This document shows, piece after piece, positions 891-14,425 of a DNA stretch of 16,348 bases. The stretch lies in NCBI RefSeq assembly GCF_006345805.1, contig NW_021825208.1, positions 1 to 16,348 on the forward strand. Direction: 5' to 3'. How positions within the stretch are numbered: the stretch's first letter is position 1; each line of letters starts with the position of its first letter. The DNA is from Octopus sinensis. Its lineage: Eukaryota. The notes below the pieces were generated by a model. It saw only the letters and a program-made list of their open reading frames with translations. It was not told the DNA's origin and did no database searches. The position numbers and the translations under genes were made by a program.

Positions 891-1310
891 AAAGGCGGCG
901 AGCTGGCAGAATCGTTAGCACGCTGGGCGAAATGCTTAGCGGTATCTCGCCCACCGTTACATTCTGAGTTCAAATTCCGCCGAGGTCGACTATGCCTTTC
1001 ATCCTTTCGGGGTCGATTTAAATAAGTACCAGTTACACACTGGGGTCGATATAATCGACTTAATCCGTTTGTCTGTCCTTGTTTGTCCCCTCTGTGTTTA
1101 GCCCCTTGTGGGTAGTAAAGAAATAGGTATCTCGCCCGCCGTTACGTTCTGAGTTCAAATTCCGCCGAGGTCGACTATGCCTTTCATCCTTTCGGGGTCG
1201 ATTTAAATAAGTACCAGTTACGCACTGGGGTCGACATAATCGACTTAATCCGTTTGTCTGCCCTTGTTTGTTCCTTCTGGGTTTAGCCCCTTGTGGGTAG
1301 TAAAAAAATA
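891..1310 (+). mobile_element. tRNA-derived SINE, dimeric (one head plus two tandem ~185-bp bodies), with target-site duplication
   Basis: Head AAAGGCGGCGAGCTGGCAGAATCGTTAGC and B-box-like GAGTTCAAATTCC (966-978). The body starts at 941 and repeats at 1126. Flanked by the direct repeat GGTAACTACGGCGAC at 876-890 and 1311-1325. Homologous to 13245-13458 and 14021-14425. Confidence 0.9.
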
Positions 1311-1332
1311 GGTAACTACGGCGACGATGAGA

Positions 1333-2165: not shown

Positions 2166-2944
2166 GTATTCCTATGACTCTATAGAATTTTCGACAAAGA
2201 AATCATTATTTCCTGTTGATGCTTTTTATGGTTATTACCACAAATAAAGACATTATTAGTGTTGTTATTATCATTCTTGATATTGTTGCAATTATGGCTG
2301 CTCTCGTTGCAATTGTTAGTAATTTCGTTGTAGTATTTTTTATTCAATATTTCCATTTCCAAATAAGCGATTTCTATACATATTTGCATACAAGTTGCAG
2401 CAAGTATGTATACTTATAGCTAATTTTGAACAAATACGGCTTCCGACGCTAATAATGTTGGATTATTTATGTTTTTTTTGCATCTGTGTTTATTTTCTTT
2501 TCGTACAATGTTGAAGGTTATCAAGTACTGCAAACTCTATTTAGGATTTCTACATTTTGCAACATGCTTACGTCTATCTATTCTCATAGGTAATCTATTA
2601 AGTGATTTACAGAAATGTTTGTATACTATTCTCCTTATAGTAGCAATTCCAAATGAGAAGATAGAAACATTCCCTAACTGTCCTATTCTCATATATTATT
2701 CCCATAGAAAATATTTACAGAATCCGACATTGCTATATTCGTGAACGGGTTTATGACTATCCTCAAAGGTGTTATGTCCATGTATGCTTTTACAGATGTA
2801 ATTGTATGTGTTTCCAGTTATAGTACCTATATAGAATTGGTTTCAAGAACATATTTCTCAACTGACAAAACGTTTTGTTTCTTTTTCATTCAACACTAAG
2901 CAGGTGTAATTCTTTACTTTTTCAGCCATTTTGGGTGTATTGTG

Positions 2945-3150
2945 CTTATTATTATTATTATTATTGACCGCATCATCATCTTCCTCATTATCAACATCGT
3001 CGTCGTCATCATCCACATAATCATCGTCATTGCCGTCGTCGTCATCATCACAAAAACCACCACCGCCACCGCCATCACCACCACCACCACCACCACCACC
3101 ACCACTGCCACAACCACCTCCACCACCAAAATGATAGTGACCGTGATGAT
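2945..3150. repeat. Compound trinucleotide tract (ATT, ATC/GTC, CAC/ACC, ATG)
   Basis: Visible triplet runs with a shifting unit; abuts the satellite array. Confidence 0.85.
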
Positions 3151-3155
3151 GAAAT

Positions 3156-3500
3156 TAAAACCGATGTGAACCGGTTAAAACCGGTATGAACCGGTTGAAA
3201 CGGGTATGAAGCGGTTAAAACCGGTGAACCTGTTAAAGCCGGTATGAACCGGTTTGGTCCGGTTTGACTGGTTTGAACTGGTTTGAACCGGATTGAACCG
3301 GTTTGAACAGGTTTGATCGGGTTTGAAACGGTTTGATACGGTCTGGACCCGTTTGAACCGGTTGGTACCGGATTGAACCGGTTTGAACCGGTTTGATCGG
3401 CTTTGAACCGGTTTGATTAGGTTTGAACCGGTTTGGACCGGTTTGAGCCGGATTGAACCGGTTTGAACCGGTTTGAACTGGTTTGAACCAGTTTGAACCG
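3156..3500. repeat. Satellite block A1: 10-bp unit TTTGAACCGG, ~35 copies
   Basis: Tandem gtttgaaccg units, more degenerate at the left edge. Contains the palindrome AACCGGTT. Confidence 0.95.
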
Positions 3501-3503
3501 ATT

Positions 3504-3764
3504 TCGGCACAGTCTTTGATCTTTGTCGGCACCGTCTTTGTTCTCTGTCGGCAACCGTCTTTGATCTTTGTCGGCAACGTCTTTGATCTCTGTCGGCACC
3601 ACCTTTGATCTTTGTCGGCACACTATTTGATCTCTATCAGCACCGTCTTTGATCTTTGTCGGTACAGTCTTTGATCTCTGTCGGGACCGCCTTTGATCTT
3701 TGTCGGCACCGAATTTGATATCTGTCGGCACCGCCTTTGATCTCTGTCGGCACCATATTTTGAT
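3504..3764. repeat. Minisatellite block B1: 22-bp unit TGTCGGCACCGYCTTTGATCTY, ~12 copies
   Basis: 22-bp period, reflected in the 22-aa repeat PTEIKDGADRDQRRCRQRSKTV (3 units = 66 nt) in the ORF track. Confidence 0.95.
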
Positions 3765-3960
3765 TAGGTTTGAAGCGGTTTAAACCGGATTGAACCGGAT
3801 TGAACCAGTTTGAACCGGTCTGAACCGGATTGAACCCGATTGAATCGGTTTCAACCGGTTTGAACTGGTTTGAACCGGTTTGATCCGGTTTGAACCAGTT
3901 TCAACCGGTTTGAACCGTATTTAACCGGTTTAGACCGGTTTGAACCGGTTTGAACCGGTC
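3765..3960. repeat. Satellite block A2: 10-bp unit, ~20 copies
   Basis: Same unit as A1. Confidence 0.95.
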
Positions 3961-4730
3961 TCGGCACCGTCTTTGTTCTTTGTCGGCACCGTCTTGGATC
4001 TCTGTCGGCACCGCCTTTGATCTTTGTCGGCAACGTATTTGATCTCTATTGGCACCGCCTTTGATCTTTGTCGCCACACTCTTTGATCTCTGTCGGCACC
4101 GTCTTTGATCTCTGTCGGCACCGCCTTTGATCTTTGTCGGCACCGTCTTTGATCTTTATCGGCACCATCTTTGATCTCTGTCGGCACCGTCTTTGCTCTT
4201 TGACGGCACCGTCTTTGATCTTTGTCGGCACCGTCTTTGATCTCTGTTGGCACCGCGTTTGATCTTTGTCGCCACTGTCTTTGATCTCTGTCGGCATCGT
4301 CTTTGATCTCTGTCGGCACCGTCTTTGATCTCTGTTGGCACCGCCTTTGATCTTTTTTCGGCACCGTAATTGATCTCTGTCGGCACCGTCTTTGATCATT
4401 GTCGGCACCGTATTTGATATCTGTCGGCACCGTCTTTGATCTCTGTCGGCACCGTCTTTGATATCTGTCGGCACCGCCTTTGATCTTTGTCGGCACCGTC
4501 TTTGATCTTTGTCGGCAACGTCTTTGATCTCTGTCGGCACATTTTTTGATATCTGTCGGCACCGCCTTTGATCTTTGTCAGCACCGTCTTTGATCTCTGT
4601 CGGCACCGTCTTTGATCTTTGTCGGCAACGTCTTTGATCTCTGTCTGCACAGTCTTTGATCTTTGTCGGCACATTCTTTGATCTCTGTCGGCACATTCTT
4701 TGATCTCTGTCGGCACCGCCTTTGATCTCT
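3961..4730. repeat. Minisatellite block B2: 22-bp unit, ~35 copies
   Basis: Same unit as B1; 770 bp. Confidence 0.95.
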
Positions 4731-6560
4731 GACATTCCTGACATTCCAGGCATTCCTGACATTCCAGATATTCCAGACATTCCAGACATACCCGACATTC
4801 CAGACATTCCTGACATTCCTCTCATTCCTGACATTCCAGGCATGCCTGATATTCCTGACATTCCAGGAATTCCTGACATTCCAGAGATTCCTGACATTCC
4901 AGACATTCCTCACATTCCAGACATTCCTGAATTTCCGGAAATTCCAGACATTCCTGACATCCCAGAAATTCCAGACATTCCTGACATTCCAGACATGTCT
5001 GACATTCCAGAAATTCCCAACATTCCTGACATTCCAAACATTCCTGACATTCCAAATATTCCTGACATTCCTGAAATTCTAAACATTCCTGACATTTGTA
5101 CCGGTTTGATCAGGCTTGATCCGGCTTTGACCTTTGTCGGCACCGTATTTGATCTCTGTTGGCACCGTCTTTGATCTCTGACGGGTCCGTCTTTGATCTC
5201 TGTCGGCACCGTCTTTGATCTCTGAGATTCATAACATTCCAGGCATTCCTGACATTCCTGACATTCAAGATATTCCAGACATTCCAGACATTCCAGACTT
5301 TCCACACATTCCAGACATACCTGACATTCCTATTATTCCTGACATTCCTATTATTCCTGACATTCCAGACATTCCTGACATTCCAGACATGCCTGATATT
5401 CCTGACATTCCAGAAATTACTGACATTCCGGACATTCCTCACATTCCAAACATTCCTGACATTCCAGACATTCCTGACATTCCGGAAATTGCAGACATTC
5501 CTGACATTCCAGAAATTCCAGACATTCCTGACATTCCCGACATGCCTGACATTCCAGACATGCCTGACATTCCAGAAATTCCAGACATTCCTCACATTCC
5601 AAAATTTCCTGACATTCCAAATATTCCTGACATTCCAGAAATTCCAGACATTCCTGACATTCCAAACATTCCTGACTTTCCAAATATTCCTGACATTCCT
5701 GAAATTCTAAAGATTCCTGACATTCCTGACATTTGTACCGGTTTGATCAGGCTTGATCCGGCTTTGATCTTTGTCGGCACCGTATTTGATCTCTGTCGGC
5801 ACCGTCTTTGATCTTTATCGGCACCGTCTTTAATGTCTGTTGGCACCGTGTTTTATCTCTGTCGGCACCGTCTTTGATCTCTGTCGGCACCGTCTTTGAT
5901 CTCTGACATTCCTGACATTCCAGGCATTCCTGACATTCCTGACATTCCAGATATTCCAGACATTCCAGACATTCCAGACATTCCTGACATTCCAGACATT
6001 CCTGACATTCCAAATATTCCTGACATTCCTGACATTCTAAACATTCCTGACATTCCTGACATTTGTACCGGTTTGATCAGTCTTGATCCGGCTTTGATCT
6101 GTGTCGGCACCGTCTTTGATCTCTGTCGGCACCGTCTTTGATCTTTGTCGGCATACTCTTTGATCACTGTCGGTACCGTCTTTGATCTCTGTCGGCACCG
6201 TCTTTGATCTCCTTCGGCACCCTCGTTGTCTGGAATAACAGGAATGTATGGAATGTCAAGAATGTCAGGAATGTCTGCAATGTTAGGAATGTCAGGAATT
6301 CCAGACATTCCAGACATTCCTGACATTCCAGACATGCCTGACATTCCAGAAATTCCCAACATTCCTGACATTCCAAACATTCCTGACATTCCAAATATTC
6401 CTGACATTCCTGAAATTCCAGACATTCCTGACATTCCAGGCGTTCCAGACATTCCAGATATTCCAGATATCCTTACATTCCTGACGTTTCTGACATTCCG
6501 GACATTCCTGACATTTGAACCGGTTTGATCAGGCTTGATCCGGTCTGAACCGGTTTGGTC
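4731..6560. repeat. Higher-order array of 9-bp GACATTCCW blocks alternating with a 34-bp junction and short 22-bp blocks
   Basis: 9-bp blocks at 4731-5096, 5224-5733, 5905-6063, 6227-6298 (inverted) and 6299-6515. Junction TGTACCGGTTTGATCAGGCTTGATCCGG.. at 5097, 5734, 6064 and 6516. 22-bp blocks at ~5125-5223, ~5762-5904 and ~6092-6222. Confidence 0.95.
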
Positions 6561-7493: not shown

Positions 7494-8712
7494 CAGGCGC
7501 TGGACAAAATAATGGAAACACCTTAAAATTGCAAACAAATTTATTCTAATATGGAGTAGGACCGACTTTGGCAGCAATTACAGCTTCAATTTTATAAGAT
7601 AGGAACTCGTACAAAGTTTGAATTGTTGCCAAAGGAATTTTTGTCCATTCTTCAGCTAAAACAGTTTCCAGTTCTTGCAGTGATATCGACTCATTTGTTT
7701 TTCTAAAATGCACAATATATGTTCAATAATATTGAGATCTGGCGACTGTAGTAGCTGATAAGTTATTCAACTTCACTAGAAAGTTCCTTGTGCCATTCAG
7801 TAACAAACTTTAGCTGTGTGAATTGGTGCATTATCATCCTAAAAGATTGCGTTTTCCTCCGGAAACAGTTCCGCAACCATAGGATGAATTTGATCATATA
7901 AAATGCTTGAATAGTCTTGACTTAATTCTGCCATGAAGAAAACCCCTTGGACCGGCGAATTTCCAAGATATAGCCTTCCAGATCATCATATATCCTCCTC
8001 CATGTTTAACAGTTGGAAGAAGGCAGTCGGAGTGAAATGCTTTTAGCTGTCTCCACATGTATACTCGGCCGGTGGTTGGAAATAAGTTAAAGGATAATTC
8101 GTCCGAGAAAATAACATTCTTCCACTGCTCTAGAGACCTATTCTGTAGGTTTTTATTCCACTCTAAACGCTTTGCAACGTTTCTTTTTGAAAGTAGTAGT
8201 TTTTCTGATTGCAGTCCTCCTATGAAAACCGTTTTTTTTTTGCAGCTCCCAGCGAACAGTTTTTGTGGAAACTGGGTTCTCGAGGTGGTCATTAAGATCT
8301 GTACTTTTGTGTAAGAGTCCGACGATCCCTATTTGAAAGTTTTGGTTTTCTTACGGAGTTTTGTTTCGACGAGGAGGTTTTTCCCTCTTTCTTACAGGCT
8401 GTCATTACTTTCGAGACAGTACTTCTTGATACACCAAACATTTTGGCTGTTTTCGTTATTCTAGCGCCTGCCATACAAGTACCAACAATTTGACCACACT
8501 GAAAAATCGATAGATCTGTCATTTTAATGAATTTTATTTACCTTTTTCTGATGATATCTGAAAAGAAACAACAATTTTAGCAAAAGATATTAAGCAACAC
8601 TAAAAATAAATCAGAAGACATAAAAATAAACAAGCATTTGGCAGTTTTATAGATATTAAAAAAATTACGATGCTATGATCCTAGGTTTTTCCATTATTTT
8701 GTCCCACCCCTG
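7494..8712 (-). mobile_element. Tc1/mariner DNA transposon, both TIRs present, decayed (DD36E spacing)
   Basis: TIR CAGGCGCTGGACAAAATAATGGAAACACCT (7494-7523) matches the reverse complement of 8683-8712 at 26/30. Left flank is TA (7492-7493); right flank reads GA. Length 1219 bp. Confidence 0.92.
7549..8522 (-). pseudogene. Tc1-like DDE transposase pseudogene
   Basis: MTDLSIFQCGQIVG...AKMFGVSRSTVSKV (HTH); WKNVIFSDE (Asp 8103-8101); PTVKHGGG; F*DDNAPIHTAK (Asp 7835-7833); SPDLNIIE (Glu 7724-7722). Several frameshifts and stops. The 3' end coordinate is approximate. Confidence 0.92.
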
Positions 8713-14020: not shown

Positions 14021-14425
14021 AAGGCAGCGAGCTGGCAGAAACGTTAGCATGCCGCGCGACGTGCTTAGTGTTATTTCGTCTACAGCTACGTTCTGAGTTC
14101 AAATTCCGCCGAGGTCAGCTTTGCTGTTCATCCTTTCGGGGTCGATTAAATAATTATCAGTTACGCACTGGGGTCGATATAAATTGACTTAATCCGTTTG
14201 TCTGTCCTTGTTTGTCATCTCTGTGTTTAGCCCTTTGTGGGTAGTAAAGAAATAGGTATATTTCGTTTGCCGCTACGTTCTGGGTTCAAATTCCGCCGAG
14301 GTCGACTTTGCCTTTCATTCTTTCGGAGTCGATAAATTAAGTACCAGTTGCTATACTGAGGTCGATTTAATTGACTGGCCCCCTCTCCCAAAATTTTGGG
14401 CCTTGTGCCTAGAGTAGAAAAGAAT
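14021..14425 (+). mobile_element. Dimeric tRNA-derived SINE (head plus two bodies with different tails)
   Basis: Head AAGGCAGCGAGCTGGCAGAAACGTTAGC. Body 1 from ~14069 ends GTGGGTAGTAAAGAAATA. Body 2 from ~14255 ends GGCCCCCTCTCCCAAAATTTTGGGCCTTGTGCCTAGAGTAGAAAAGAAT. (GT)-rich sequence on both sides. Confidence 0.88.

What the first reader, a model, noticed from the sequence alone, without database searches (positions are those of the whole stretch)
4731..6515. 9-bp satellite is a TEAD double-motif array (CATTCC-N3-CATTCC)
The unit reads ACATTCCWG, matching the TEAD consensus including its degenerate W: the last base is A or T in 37 of 40 units of block 4731-5090. The 9-bp period gives the 3-bp spacer known for cooperative TEAD and Scalloped-Vestigial binding. 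In that block 26 of 40 units have exact CATTCC. Deviations per position of GACATTCCW are 6,4,10,1,0,4,1,1,3, so ATTCC is the most conserved part. About 145-150 units in total.
Basis: partly seen in the sequence, partly recalled or inferred. Interest (0 to 1): 0.7.

Follow-up and report, generated by a model that had tools for sequence, protein, structure and literature searches.

The report
Octopus 9-bp minisatellite resembling TEAD sites
A real 149-unit tandem repeat in an octopus genome spells out, unit after unit, the known cooperative binding site of the TEAD growth-control factor, but it looks like an ordinary, recently duplicated non-coding minisatellite and shows no sign of being kept for that purpose.

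Summary
Every count for block 4731-5090 was reproduced, and the region holds 141 forward and 8 inverted 9-bp units (GACATTCCW).

The syntax claim is also correct. The unit fits the published Tead single motif RMATTCCWD. The 9-bp period equals the published strictly spaced Tead double motif (PMC12008814). The region has 94 single and 64 double matches.

The functional reading is not supported.
- The window is Octopus DNA.
- The 9-mer arrays are one part of a 3.4-kb compound satellite that also contains 10-mer and 22-mer arrays.
- The four 9-mer blocks are segmental duplicates of one another.
- The "degenerate W" is mostly an alternating 18-bp higher-order repeat.
- Once duplicated units are collapsed, the per-position bias is no longer significant (chi-square p=0.19; CATTCC core against flank p=0.52).
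- The neighbouring 22-mer satellite shows a stronger "conserved core" pattern than the 9-mer does.

A second O. vulgaris locus carries the same 9-mer beside different satellites. Coding readings, (DIP)n or collagen-like (GMS)n, have no real support.

Best reading: a neutral minisatellite that would probably bind TEAD in vitro. It would be a small convergent analogue of human HSat3, which is reported to bind TEAD. In vivo binding was not tested.

The parts
3159..3504 (+). 10-bp tandem array AACCGGTTTG. It is the left edge of the compound satellite.
   Evidence: TRF (34.9 copies). There are 18 exact AACCGGTT in the window.
3504..3754 (+). 22-bp tandem array TCGGCACCGTCTTTGATCTCTG, with a 44-bp higher-order period.
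   Evidence: TRF; per-position profile.
3767..3959 (+). Second 10-bp array.
   Evidence: TRF (19.3 copies).
3961..4731 (+). Main 22-bp array (35 copies). It runs directly into 9-mer block 1.
   Evidence: TRF. It is 80-87% identical to the 22-mer arrays of the O. vulgaris locus L001.
4731..5099 (+). 9-mer block 1: 40 units of GACATTCCW plus the terminal degenerate unit GACATTTGT.
5100..5223 (+). Linker (ACCGGTTTGATCAGGCTTGATCCGGCTTTGA...) plus about 4.7 copies of the 22-mer.
5224..5736 (+). 9-mer block 2: 56 units plus the terminal degenerate unit.
   Evidence: Its start and end are paralogous to blocks 1 and 3.
5737..5904 (+). Linker plus about 6.7 copies of the 22-mer.
5905..6066 (+). 9-mer block 3: 17 units plus the terminal degenerate unit.
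   Evidence: TRF reports a 330-bp period with 89% matches over 5578-6228.
6067..6226 (+). Linker plus about 6.4 copies of the 22-mer.
6227..6299 (-). Inverted 9-mer block of about 8 units on the other strand. Together with block 4 it forms a roughly 72-nt-arm palindrome centred on GGAATTCC.
   Evidence: arms 6227-6298 and 6299-6370, 79% complementary, 0 nt spacer. DNA fold -51.4 kcal/mol, z=-10.1.
6295..6518 (+). 9-mer block 4: 19 units, then one 8-bp unit (1-bp deletion at 6466-6473), then 4 units and the terminal GACATTTGA.
6514..6557 (+). Short 10-bp array (TTTGAACCGG) that closes the compound satellite.
   Evidence: TRF.

Best explanation
The region is a non-coding compound minisatellite in an Octopus genome.

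How it arose: a 9-bp unit, effectively an 18-bp dimer GACATTCCA + xxxATTCCT, was amplified by replication slippage or unequal exchange next to a 22-bp satellite. The whole module (9-mer array + 42-bp linker + 5-7 22-mers) was then duplicated three to four times. One template-switch inversion occurred at 6227-6299.

Why it looks like a TEAD array: the unit happens to spell the TEAD consensus. Because the unit is 9 bp long, the array is automatically a continuous run of correctly spaced Tead double motifs.

What the conservation pattern means: it reflects the recency of amplification and the inheritance of variants through duplication. It does not reflect selection on TEAD binding.

Shown and inferred:
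- Shown: the structure, the duplication history, the motif match, the loss of position bias after collapsing, and the occurrence of the same satellites at other Octopus loci.
- Inferred: neutrality, and that purified TEAD/Scalloped would bind the array in vitro.
For: Organism and repeat family:
- The best protein hit of the minus-strand ORF is a 'Hypothetical predicted protein [Octopus vulgaris]' that is simply translated 22-mer.
- Its locus L001 is a 9-kb compound array of 22-mers and 10-mers with no 9-mer and unrelated flanks.
- Interspersed repeats in the window match O. vulgaris loci at 86-92%.

Duplication history:
- All blocks share the same junctions and the same order of variants at both ends.
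- TRF reports a 330-bp period at 89% matches.
- The repeat has an 18-bp dimer structure.

No sign of constraint:
- After collapsing duplicates the position bias is not significant.
- The most variable position lies inside the CATTCC core.
- The neighbouring 22-mer shows a stronger 'invariant core plus two-state position' pattern.

Occurrence elsewhere:
- A second O. vulgaris locus (L002 29322-29861, 37 units) carries the 9-mer among different satellites.
- Arrays of 3 to 28 units of the same 9-mer occur in 62 metagenome contigs with GC 0.23-0.70.
- Shuffled-unit controls are about as frequent in viral contigs: 2, 74 and 6 hits against 3 for the real unit.

Chance: a random 9-bp satellite is a full TEAD-consensus array 0.16-0.23% of the time. 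Multiplied over roughly a hundred or more known motif families, a match to some factor is unremarkable.
Against: - The match to the published double-motif syntax is exact and very dense, with 64 double motifs in 1.3 kb of 9-mer.
- A satellite of similar motif density, human HSat3, is reported to bind TEAD and recruit YAP (PMC11526998).
- ATTCC against the other four positions stays marginally under-changed after collapsing (p=0.03-0.05, a post hoc test).
- Variant letters at degenerate positions mostly stay within the consensus: G at R, A at M, A/T at D.
- The two neighbouring satellites also carry canonical factor consensus sequences, CTTTGAT and AACCGGTT. The CTTTGAT core is significantly under-changed at an independent locus.
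- No chromatin, expression or cross-species data could be consulted.
Confidence: 0.7

Rival explanations
1. TEAD platform. The arrays are bound in vivo by the octopus TEAD/Scalloped protein, cooperatively on adjacent units. They would act as a strong Hippo-responsive enhancer or as a local sink for TEAD and its cofactors, like a small version of human HSat3.
For: - The single and double motif syntax matches exactly.
- There is a precedent for a TEAD-binding satellite whose 1.8-kb reporter fragment carried 104 GGAATG. Here there are 93 in 1.8 kb.
- The Hippo core, including TEAD, is reported in Octopus.
- The ATTCC core is marginally conserved.
- The 9-mer recurs at a second locus.
Against: - No binding data exist for this sequence.
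- The position bias is not significant after collapsing.
- The C of CATTCC is the most variable base.
- W is explained by the 18-bp dimer.
- The array sits inside a repeat-rich compound satellite, which is likely to be packaged as repeat chromatin (inference).
- Full-length TEAD4 has a footprint of about 25 bp and does not fill consecutive sites on a 10x MCAT template (PMC13247214). Occupancy of every 9-bp unit is therefore sterically doubtful.
Confidence: 0.14
2. Multi-factor element. The whole compound satellite would be a set of binding arrays for several conserved factors: the 10-mer for Grainyhead (AACCGGTT), the 22-mer for TCF/LEF (CTTTGAT) and the 9-mer for TEAD. It might be carried or seeded by a mobile element, with the protein-binding cores under constraint.
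For: - AACCGGTT is the Grainyhead-like consensus (PMC5829564), and there are 18 exact copies in the window.
- CTTTGAT is the core of the TCF/Pangolin HMG site (PMC4154663). There are 48 copies in the window and 298 in L001.
- In L001, CTTTGAT is the least-changing 7-mer of the 22-mer when averaged over all 22 registers: 7.2 inferred events against a mean of 22.8. The result holds within base classes: G/C p=0.002, A/T p=1e-4.
- The joint chance of three such matches is low if taken at face value.
Against: - The motifs were recognised post hoc from memory, out of a large motif vocabulary.
- Other octopus satellites in L002 also 'resemble' something.
- Only 9 of 61 window units and 7 of 282 L001 units fit the full TCF/Pan consensus.
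- In L001 about half the 10-mers are not AACCGGTT.
- The variable part of the 22-mer is G+C-rich and holds CpGs, so mutation bias explains part of the contrast.
- The core signal is register-sensitive at loose thresholds.
- The 9-mer itself shows no significant core constraint.
Confidence: 0.1
3. Protein-coding repeat. The array would encode (Asp-Ile-Pro)n on the plus strand, or a collagen-like (Gly-Met-Ser)n on the minus strand.
For: - Raw variability is highest at positions 3, 6 and 9, the third codon positions of both frames.
- Each block is open in the DIP frame.
- The minus-strand frame passes the Pfam Collagen threshold (53.5 bits against 27.2).
- Two O. vulgaris gene models include such repeats.
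- (DIP)n encoded by the same 9-mer sits inside genuine-looking proteins in metagenomes.
Against: - The excess at third positions is not robust after collapsing (p=0.11 for the window, 0.034 with L002).
- Two of the three plus frames and all three minus frames are stop-free by construction.
- The intervening 22-mers carry stops in every plus frame.
- A 1-bp deletion at 6466-6473 and the inversion at 6227-6299 break both frames.
- Any Gly-X-Y repeat hits the Collagen model.
- The P0093 'DIP tail' is an exon placed 19 kb from a truncated PIF1 fragment, and P0001 is pure 22-mer translation. Both look like prediction artefacts.
- None of the three window ORFs searched found an identical or closely related protein in the database; two of them, looked up by exact sequence, are not on record.
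Confidence: 0.04

Closest known systems
Tead double motif: a strictly spaced direct repeat of TEAD sites, RMATTCCNNRMATTCC (Dalal et al. 2025, PMC12008814)
   Same: The half-site is identical (ACATTCCW fits RMATTCCW). The orientation is direct and the period is 9 bp. The paper's best example, GCATTCCCGACATTCCC, even contains GACATTCC.
   Different: The known instances are isolated pairs inside enhancers, with measured TEAD4 footprints. Here about 149 units run head to tail inside a satellite, and no binding data exist.
Human Satellite 3, (GGAAT)n, as a TEAD/YAP binding platform (Franklin et al., bioRxiv 2024/2025, PMC11526998)
   Same: Both are tandem satellites whose unit recreates the GGAATG/CATTCC core at very high density. 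The HSat3 reporter fragment had 104 sites in 1.8 kb. This region has 93 in 1.8 kb.
   Different: HSat3 has a 5-bp unit, spans megabases, is pericentromeric and lies next to rDNA. It was shown experimentally to bind TEAD1-4. The octopus array has a 9-bp unit in the double-motif register and about 1.3 kb of 9-mer. It lies among other satellites in a repeat-rich arm region and is untested. The two share no common descent.
Ordinary compound minisatellites or satellites with higher-order repeats
   Same: It has head-to-tail units, a dimeric (18-bp) and a modular (about 330-680 bp) higher-order structure, and segmental duplication. There is a local inversion. The same families are dispersed at other loci with different flanks.
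   Different: Nothing structural differs. The only unusual point is that the unit coincides with a well-characterised cooperative transcription-factor site.
Synthetic multimerised TEAD reporters (multimerised GTIIC/MCAT sites; 10x MCAT template in PMC13247214)
   Same: It is a multimerised array of TEAD core sites.
   Different: The reporters are engineered and short, with wider spacing. That paper reports that full-length TEAD4 does not occupy consecutive sites as monomers.

Membership tests
Tead double motif (cooperative TEAD site) | Two half-sites matching RMATTCC(WD) in direct orientation | tested here: met
   RMATTCCWD has 88 forward and 6 reverse matches in 4731-6520, and only 4 in the rest of the window. 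The pattern is taken from PMC12008814.
Tead double motif (cooperative TEAD site) | Strict spacing, RMATTCC-NN-RMATTCC (9-bp period) | tested here: met
   There are 62 forward and 2 reverse matches to RMATTCCNNRMATTCC, all inside the region. The spacing follows automatically from a 9-bp unit.
Tead double motif (cooperative TEAD site) | Cooperative occupancy by TEAD proteins (footprint, EMSA) | not testable with these tools
Tead double motif (cooperative TEAD site) | The host encodes a TEAD/Scalloped protein | not tested
   Literature only: the Hippo core, including TEAD, is reported as conserved in Octopus bimaculoides (PMC10164948).
Transcription-factor-binding satellite (HSat3 type) | Tandem array with a very high density of the GGAATG core | tested here: met
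   There are 93 CATTCC/GGAATG in 1.8 kb, against 2 in the other 14.5 kb.
Transcription-factor-binding satellite (HSat3 type) | Large (100 kb to Mb) arrays that form visible nuclear foci | tested here: not met
   The window holds about 1.3 kb of 9-mer. The only other octopus locus found holds 0.35 kb.
Transcription-factor-binding satellite (HSat3 type) | Demonstrated recruitment of TEAD/YAP | not testable with these tools
   This needs imaging or ChIP in octopus cells.
Sequence under purifying selection for a binding core | Independent changes avoid the core relative to the flanks | tested here: not met
   Inferred events per position are 5,6,10,5,0,4,4,4,6 (chi-square p=0.19). CATTCC against flank gives p=0.52, or p=0.40 with L002 added. 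ATTCC alone is marginal at p=0.03-0.05.
Compound minisatellite with higher-order repeats | Head-to-tail units, higher-order periodicity, and modules duplicated as blocks | tested here: met
   TRF periods are 9/18/27/45 and 330. The base at position 9 (W) alternates between A and T (p=3e-5). Block starts and ends are shared.
Compound minisatellite with higher-order repeats | The same repeat families occur at other loci with unrelated flanks | tested here: met
   L001 has the 22-mer and 10-mer over 9 kb with no 9-mer. L002 has the 9-mer beside 26-mer arrays.
Protein-coding tandem repeat (DIP repeat or collagen-like GXY) | One reading frame is maintained through the whole repeat region | tested here: not met
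   The 22-mers carry stops in the plus frames. A 1-bp deletion at 6466-6473 and the inversion at 6227-6299 shift both candidate frames.
Protein-coding tandem repeat (DIP repeat or collagen-like GXY) | Excess of changes at synonymous (third) positions | tested here: inconclusive
   Third positions hold 20 of 44 events (p=0.11) in the window, and 27 of 57 (p=0.034) with L002 added.

The most novel reading that the evidence does not exclude
The octopus compound satellite (10-mer AACCGGTTTG, 22-mer ...CTTTGATC..., 9-mer GACATTCCW) would be a dispersed family of multi-factor binding arrays. The three arrays would offer Grainyhead-like, TCF/LEF-like and TEAD double-motif sites. The protein-contact cores would be constrained, as the CTTTGAT core of the 22-mer appears to be at an independent O. 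vulgaris locus. The 9-mer arrays would then recruit Scalloped/TEAD cooperatively in vivo. That would make this an invertebrate, double-motif-phased counterpart of the HSat3 TEAD platform.
Probability: 0.1. Interest if true: 0.65.

Novelty: new member of a known kind. Interest (0 to 1): 0.28.

Why it matters
If octopus TEAD did occupy these arrays, this would be a second, independently evolved satellite acting as a Hippo-pathway factor platform. It would also be the first one phased exactly on the cooperative 9-bp double motif. That would support the idea, raised for human HSat3, that satellites can act as transcription-factor platforms.

As the evidence stands, the main value is a caution. A short satellite unit will often coincide with some factor's consensus. 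Per-position "conservation" inside a recently duplicated array is not evidence of selection unless duplicated units are collapsed and neighbouring satellites are used as controls.

Tried and rejected
- Rfam and tRNA scans of the window found nothing.
- Pfam on the candidate ORFs returned only the trivial Collagen hit for the Gly-X-Y frame. The transposase-like ORF had no hit.
- Exact look-ups of two window ORFs in the gene-position index were not on record.
- A third protein search, using the NVR/NVW frame, returned only P0001 through its 22-mer part. It gave no further octopus loci with the 9-mer.
- The idea that the same 9-mer in metagenomes and in a giant-virus-like contig points to a shared function was rejected. 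The contigs are heterogeneous (GC 0.23-0.70), and some arrays are coding linkers. Shuffled 9-mers of the same composition are about as frequent in viral contigs.
- The first estimate of 22-mer core conservation (p=2e-10) was partly a register artefact. When the unit boundary was placed inside the core at a loose threshold, the signal vanished. It survives only at 3 or fewer mismatches and when averaged over all registers.
- The flanks of the window array and of the L001 array share only dispersed SINE-like repeats and microsatellites. There is no evidence for a common carrier transposon.
- The orthologous locus in other Octopus species could not be fetched. No eukaryotic nucleotide collection is on hand.
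Full report
**1. Observation**

The region was read directly and parsed in register. Block 4731-5090 consists of 40 units of GACATTCCW. Deviations per position are 6,4,10,1,0,4,1,1,3. Exact CATTCC occurs in 26 of 40 units, and the last base is A or T in 37 of 40.

Tandem Repeats Finder reports the arrays with periods 9, 18, 27 and 45. There are four forward blocks: 4731-5099, 5224-5736, 5905-6066 and 6295-6518. The last carries a 1-bp deletion at 6466-6473. A block of about 8 units lies in the opposite orientation at 6227-6299. The total is 149 units.

The inverted block and the start of block 4 form a palindrome with arms of about 72 nt, centred on GGAATTCC. Folded as single-stranded DNA it gives -51.4 kcal/mol, z=-10.1.

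CATTCC/GGAATG occurs 93 times in 4731-6520 and twice in the remaining 14.5 kb. The one qualification is that the stated span is interrupted three times by a linker and 22-bp repeats.

**2. What surrounds it**

The 9-mer arrays are one component of a 3.4-kb compound satellite spanning 3159-6557. Its order is as follows:
- a 10-bp array (AACCGGTTTG)
- a 22-bp array (TCGGCACCGTCTTTGATCTCTG, with a 44-bp higher-order period)
- the 10-mer again
- a long 22-mer array
- four modules of [9-mer array + 42-bp linker + 5-7 22-mers]
- a short 10-mer array that closes the structure

The modules are segmental duplicates. The 22-mer-to-9-mer junctions and the first units are the same in blocks 1-3 (GACATTCCT GACATTCCA GGCATTCCT ... 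GATATTCCA GACATTCCA). Mean column identity there is 91%. The last units plus linker are also shared (... AATATTCCT GACATTCCT GA[A/C]ATTCTA AA[C/G]ATTCCT ... GACATTTGT ACCGGTTTGATCAGGCTTGATCCGG).

**3. Organism and related loci**

The 286-aa minus-strand ORF found one strong relative, a 'Hypothetical predicted protein [Octopus vulgaris]'. That protein is simply translated 22-mer.

Its locus is L001, on chromosome OX597818.1 of GCA_951406725.2. It is a 9-kb compound array of the same 22-mer and 10-mer, with no 9-mer and unrelated flanks.

The plus-strand (DIP)n ORF found an O. vulgaris 'ATP-dependent DNA helicase' model. Its last 48 residues come from a 9-mer array. That exon lies 19 kb from a truncated PIF1 exon, so the model is probably an artefact.

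The helical model's locus, L002, holds two 9-mer arrays of 21 and 16 units at 29322-29861. They sit between 26-bp arrays of opposite orientation.

SINE-like repeats in the window match L002 at 86-92%. The window is therefore Octopus DNA. Its satellites are dispersed families, and the 9-mer keeps company with different satellites at different loci.

**4. The TEAD syntax**

PMC12008814 gives the Tead single motif as RMATTCCWD. It describes a strictly spaced double motif, RMATTCCNNRMATTCC, with best example GCATTCCCGACATTCCC. On this motif two TEAD4 DNA-binding domains cooperate, giving about 4-fold more binding than an additive model predicts. A 1-bp insertion or deletion weakens the effect.

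The octopus unit fits this exactly. The region has 88+6 single and 62+2 double matches.

TEAD and the Hippo core are reported as conserved in Octopus bimaculoides (PMC10164948). There is a direct precedent for a satellite acting as a TEAD platform. Human HSat3, (GGAAT)n, binds TEAD1-4 and recruits YAP, and a 1.8-kb fragment with 104 GGAATG was active in a reporter (PMC11526998).

Against full occupancy, full-length TEAD4 is reported not to fill consecutive sites on a 10x MCAT template (PMC13247214).

**5. Is there evidence of selection for TEAD binding?**

No robust evidence was found.

(a) W is not free degeneracy. A and T alternate: 80 of 115 adjacent pairs differ (p=3e-5). Variant first triplets follow A-ending units (Fisher p=4e-4). 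The real unit is an 18-bp dimer.

(b) Two unit types make up 49% of all units, and there are only 37 distinct types.

(c) Each type was attached to its nearest more abundant type to infer independent changes.
- For the window, changes per position are 5,6,10,5,0,4,4,4,6 (chi-square p=0.19).
- CATTCC against flank gives p=0.52.
- ATTCC against the rest gives p=0.03, a post hoc test.
- Third codon positions give p=0.11.
- Adding the 37 units of L002 gives p=0.28, 0.40, 0.046 and 0.034 respectively.

(d) The most variable position is the C of CATTCC.

(e) The adjacent 22-mer serves as a control and shows a far stronger non-uniform profile (p=1e-15).

(f) Any 9-bp unit that contains CATTCC has the N3 spacing automatically.

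(g) A random 9-bp satellite is a full TEAD-consensus array with probability 0.16-0.23%. Over roughly a hundred or more motif families of similar information content (my estimate), a match to some factor is expected for a sizeable fraction of satellites.

**6. Coding rivals**

Raw variability peaks at positions 3, 6 and 9. These are third codon positions both for (Asp-Ile-Pro)n on the plus strand and for (Gly-Met-Ser)n on the minus strand. The minus-strand frame passes the Pfam Collagen threshold, as any Gly-X-Y repeat would.

Several facts argue against a coding role:
- The frames are stop-free by construction.
- The 22-mers carry stops in the plus frames.
- The deletion and the inversion break both frames.
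- The third-position excess is weak after collapsing.
- The only octopus gene models that include these repeats look artefactual.

**7. Recurrence elsewhere**

Three or more perfect units occur in 62 metagenome contigs and 3 viral contigs. A multi-copy element in a 2.3-Mb ENA contig that carries giant-virus marker genes also contains them.

These contigs are heterogeneous (GC 0.23-0.70). Some arrays are coding linkers in genuine-looking proteins. Shuffled units of the same composition gave 2, 74 and 6 viral-contig hits against 3 for the real unit. The recurrence is not special.

**8. An observation outside the finding**

The neighbouring satellites also spell canonical sites.
- AACCGGTT is the Grainyhead-like consensus (PMC5829564). 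There are 18 exact copies in the window.
- CTTTGAT is the core of the TCF/Pangolin HMG site (PMC4154663). It is present in most 22-mers.

In L001, CTTTGAT is the least-changing 7-mer of the 22-mer when averaged over all 22 registers at 3 or fewer mismatches. It shows 7.2 inferred events against a mean of 22.8 and a maximum of 35 for GGCACCG. The depletion persists within base classes.

I found and corrected a register artefact in the first version of this test. GC-to-AT and CpG mutation bias explain part of the contrast. Few units fit the full TCF consensus. This is the basis of the 'novel case', and I rate it unlikely.

**9. Verdict**

The feature is real and the motif syntax claim is right. 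The best-supported reading is a neutral, recently duplicated compound minisatellite whose unit coincides with the TEAD double motif (confidence 0.7). It would probably bind TEAD in vitro, which is an inference. Whether it does anything in vivo is untested. The in vivo platform reading gets about 0.14, the multi-factor array reading about 0.1, and the coding reading about 0.04.

Noticed in passing
window 3504-4731, 5121-5224, 5758-5905, 6088-6228; L001 2150-11363: The 22-bp satellite carries CTTTGAT, the core of the TCF/Pangolin HMG site. This is its least-changing 7-mer at the independent O. vulgaris locus L001: 7.2 inferred events against a mean of 22.8, averaged over all registers. In the window the minimum is TTTGATC. 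Part of the contrast comes from the G+C- and CpG-rich variable half.
   Followed up: partly
window 3159-3504, 3767-3959, 6514-6557: The 10-bp satellite AACCGGTTTG contains the palindromic Grainyhead-like consensus AACCGGTT, with 18 exact copies. In L001 about half of the 10-mers read ATCCGGTTTG instead and share TTTGAT with the 22-mer. This suggests the 10-mer and 22-mer families are related.
   Followed up: partly
window 6227-6370: There is a perfect-register inversion of about 8 units against the following forward units. It forms a palindrome with 72-nt arms centred on GGAATTCC (z=-10 as a DNA hairpin). It is probably a replication template-switch scar.
   Followed up: yes
L002 28794-30426: At the second O. 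vulgaris locus the two 9-mer arrays lie between 26-bp arrays of opposite orientation (TTCGATCAACTGTCCACTGGTGTAAA and its reverse complement). They are separated by about 195 bp of a TGACGT-rich 25-bp repeat, which gives a foldback-like arrangement.
   Followed up: no
L001 10001-10753 (P0001); L002 10001-10819 and 29727-29870 (P0093): Two gene models in the O. vulgaris annotation look like artefacts of translating satellites. P0001 is pure 22-mer translation. P0093 joins a truncated PIF1-helicase exon to an exon inside a 9-mer array 19 kb away.
   Followed up: partly
L003 5079-5213, and proteins P0033, P0042, P0045, P0052, P0053, P0057, P0058, P0079, P0083, P0094, P0111: A multi-copy element occurs on large ENA contigs; the one contig fetched (2.3 Mb, L003) also carries Pox_A32 and VLTF3-like genes. 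It contains 6-15 units of the same 9-mer (CAC/GAC/GGC ATTCCW), and the called ORFs share conserved flanks (...KKSRDYGPRGKSLLYY / EIFDLGISSQTGFFLGG...). Its nature is unknown.
   Followed up: partly
window 941-1314; also 907-1245 and 14021-14396: A 185-bp unit is tandemly duplicated (95% matches) inside a SINE-like dispersed repeat. That repeat matches O. vulgaris loci at 85-92%. ARAGORN and Rfam call no tRNA there.
   Followed up: partly
window 7894-8292 (-): A 132-aa ORF with a ...TVKHGGGYMMIW... stretch resembles, from memory, the catalytic region of Tc1/mariner transposases. Pfam gave no hit at E<=0.1, so it is a degraded remnant at best.
   Followed up: partly
window 2940-3128: A run of trinucleotide repeats, (ATT)n, (ATC/GTC)n and (ACC)n, lies directly left of the compound satellite. 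It is open on the minus strand as an Asp/Gly-rich low-complexity peptide. It is probably just microsatellite.
   Followed up: no
window 4666-4709: The two 22-mers just upstream of 9-mer block 1 are the variant TCGGCACATTCTTTGATCTCTG. Their CACATTCTT resembles the 9-mer unit. This could mark the origin of the 9-mer from the 22-mer, or conversion in the opposite direction.
   Followed up: no
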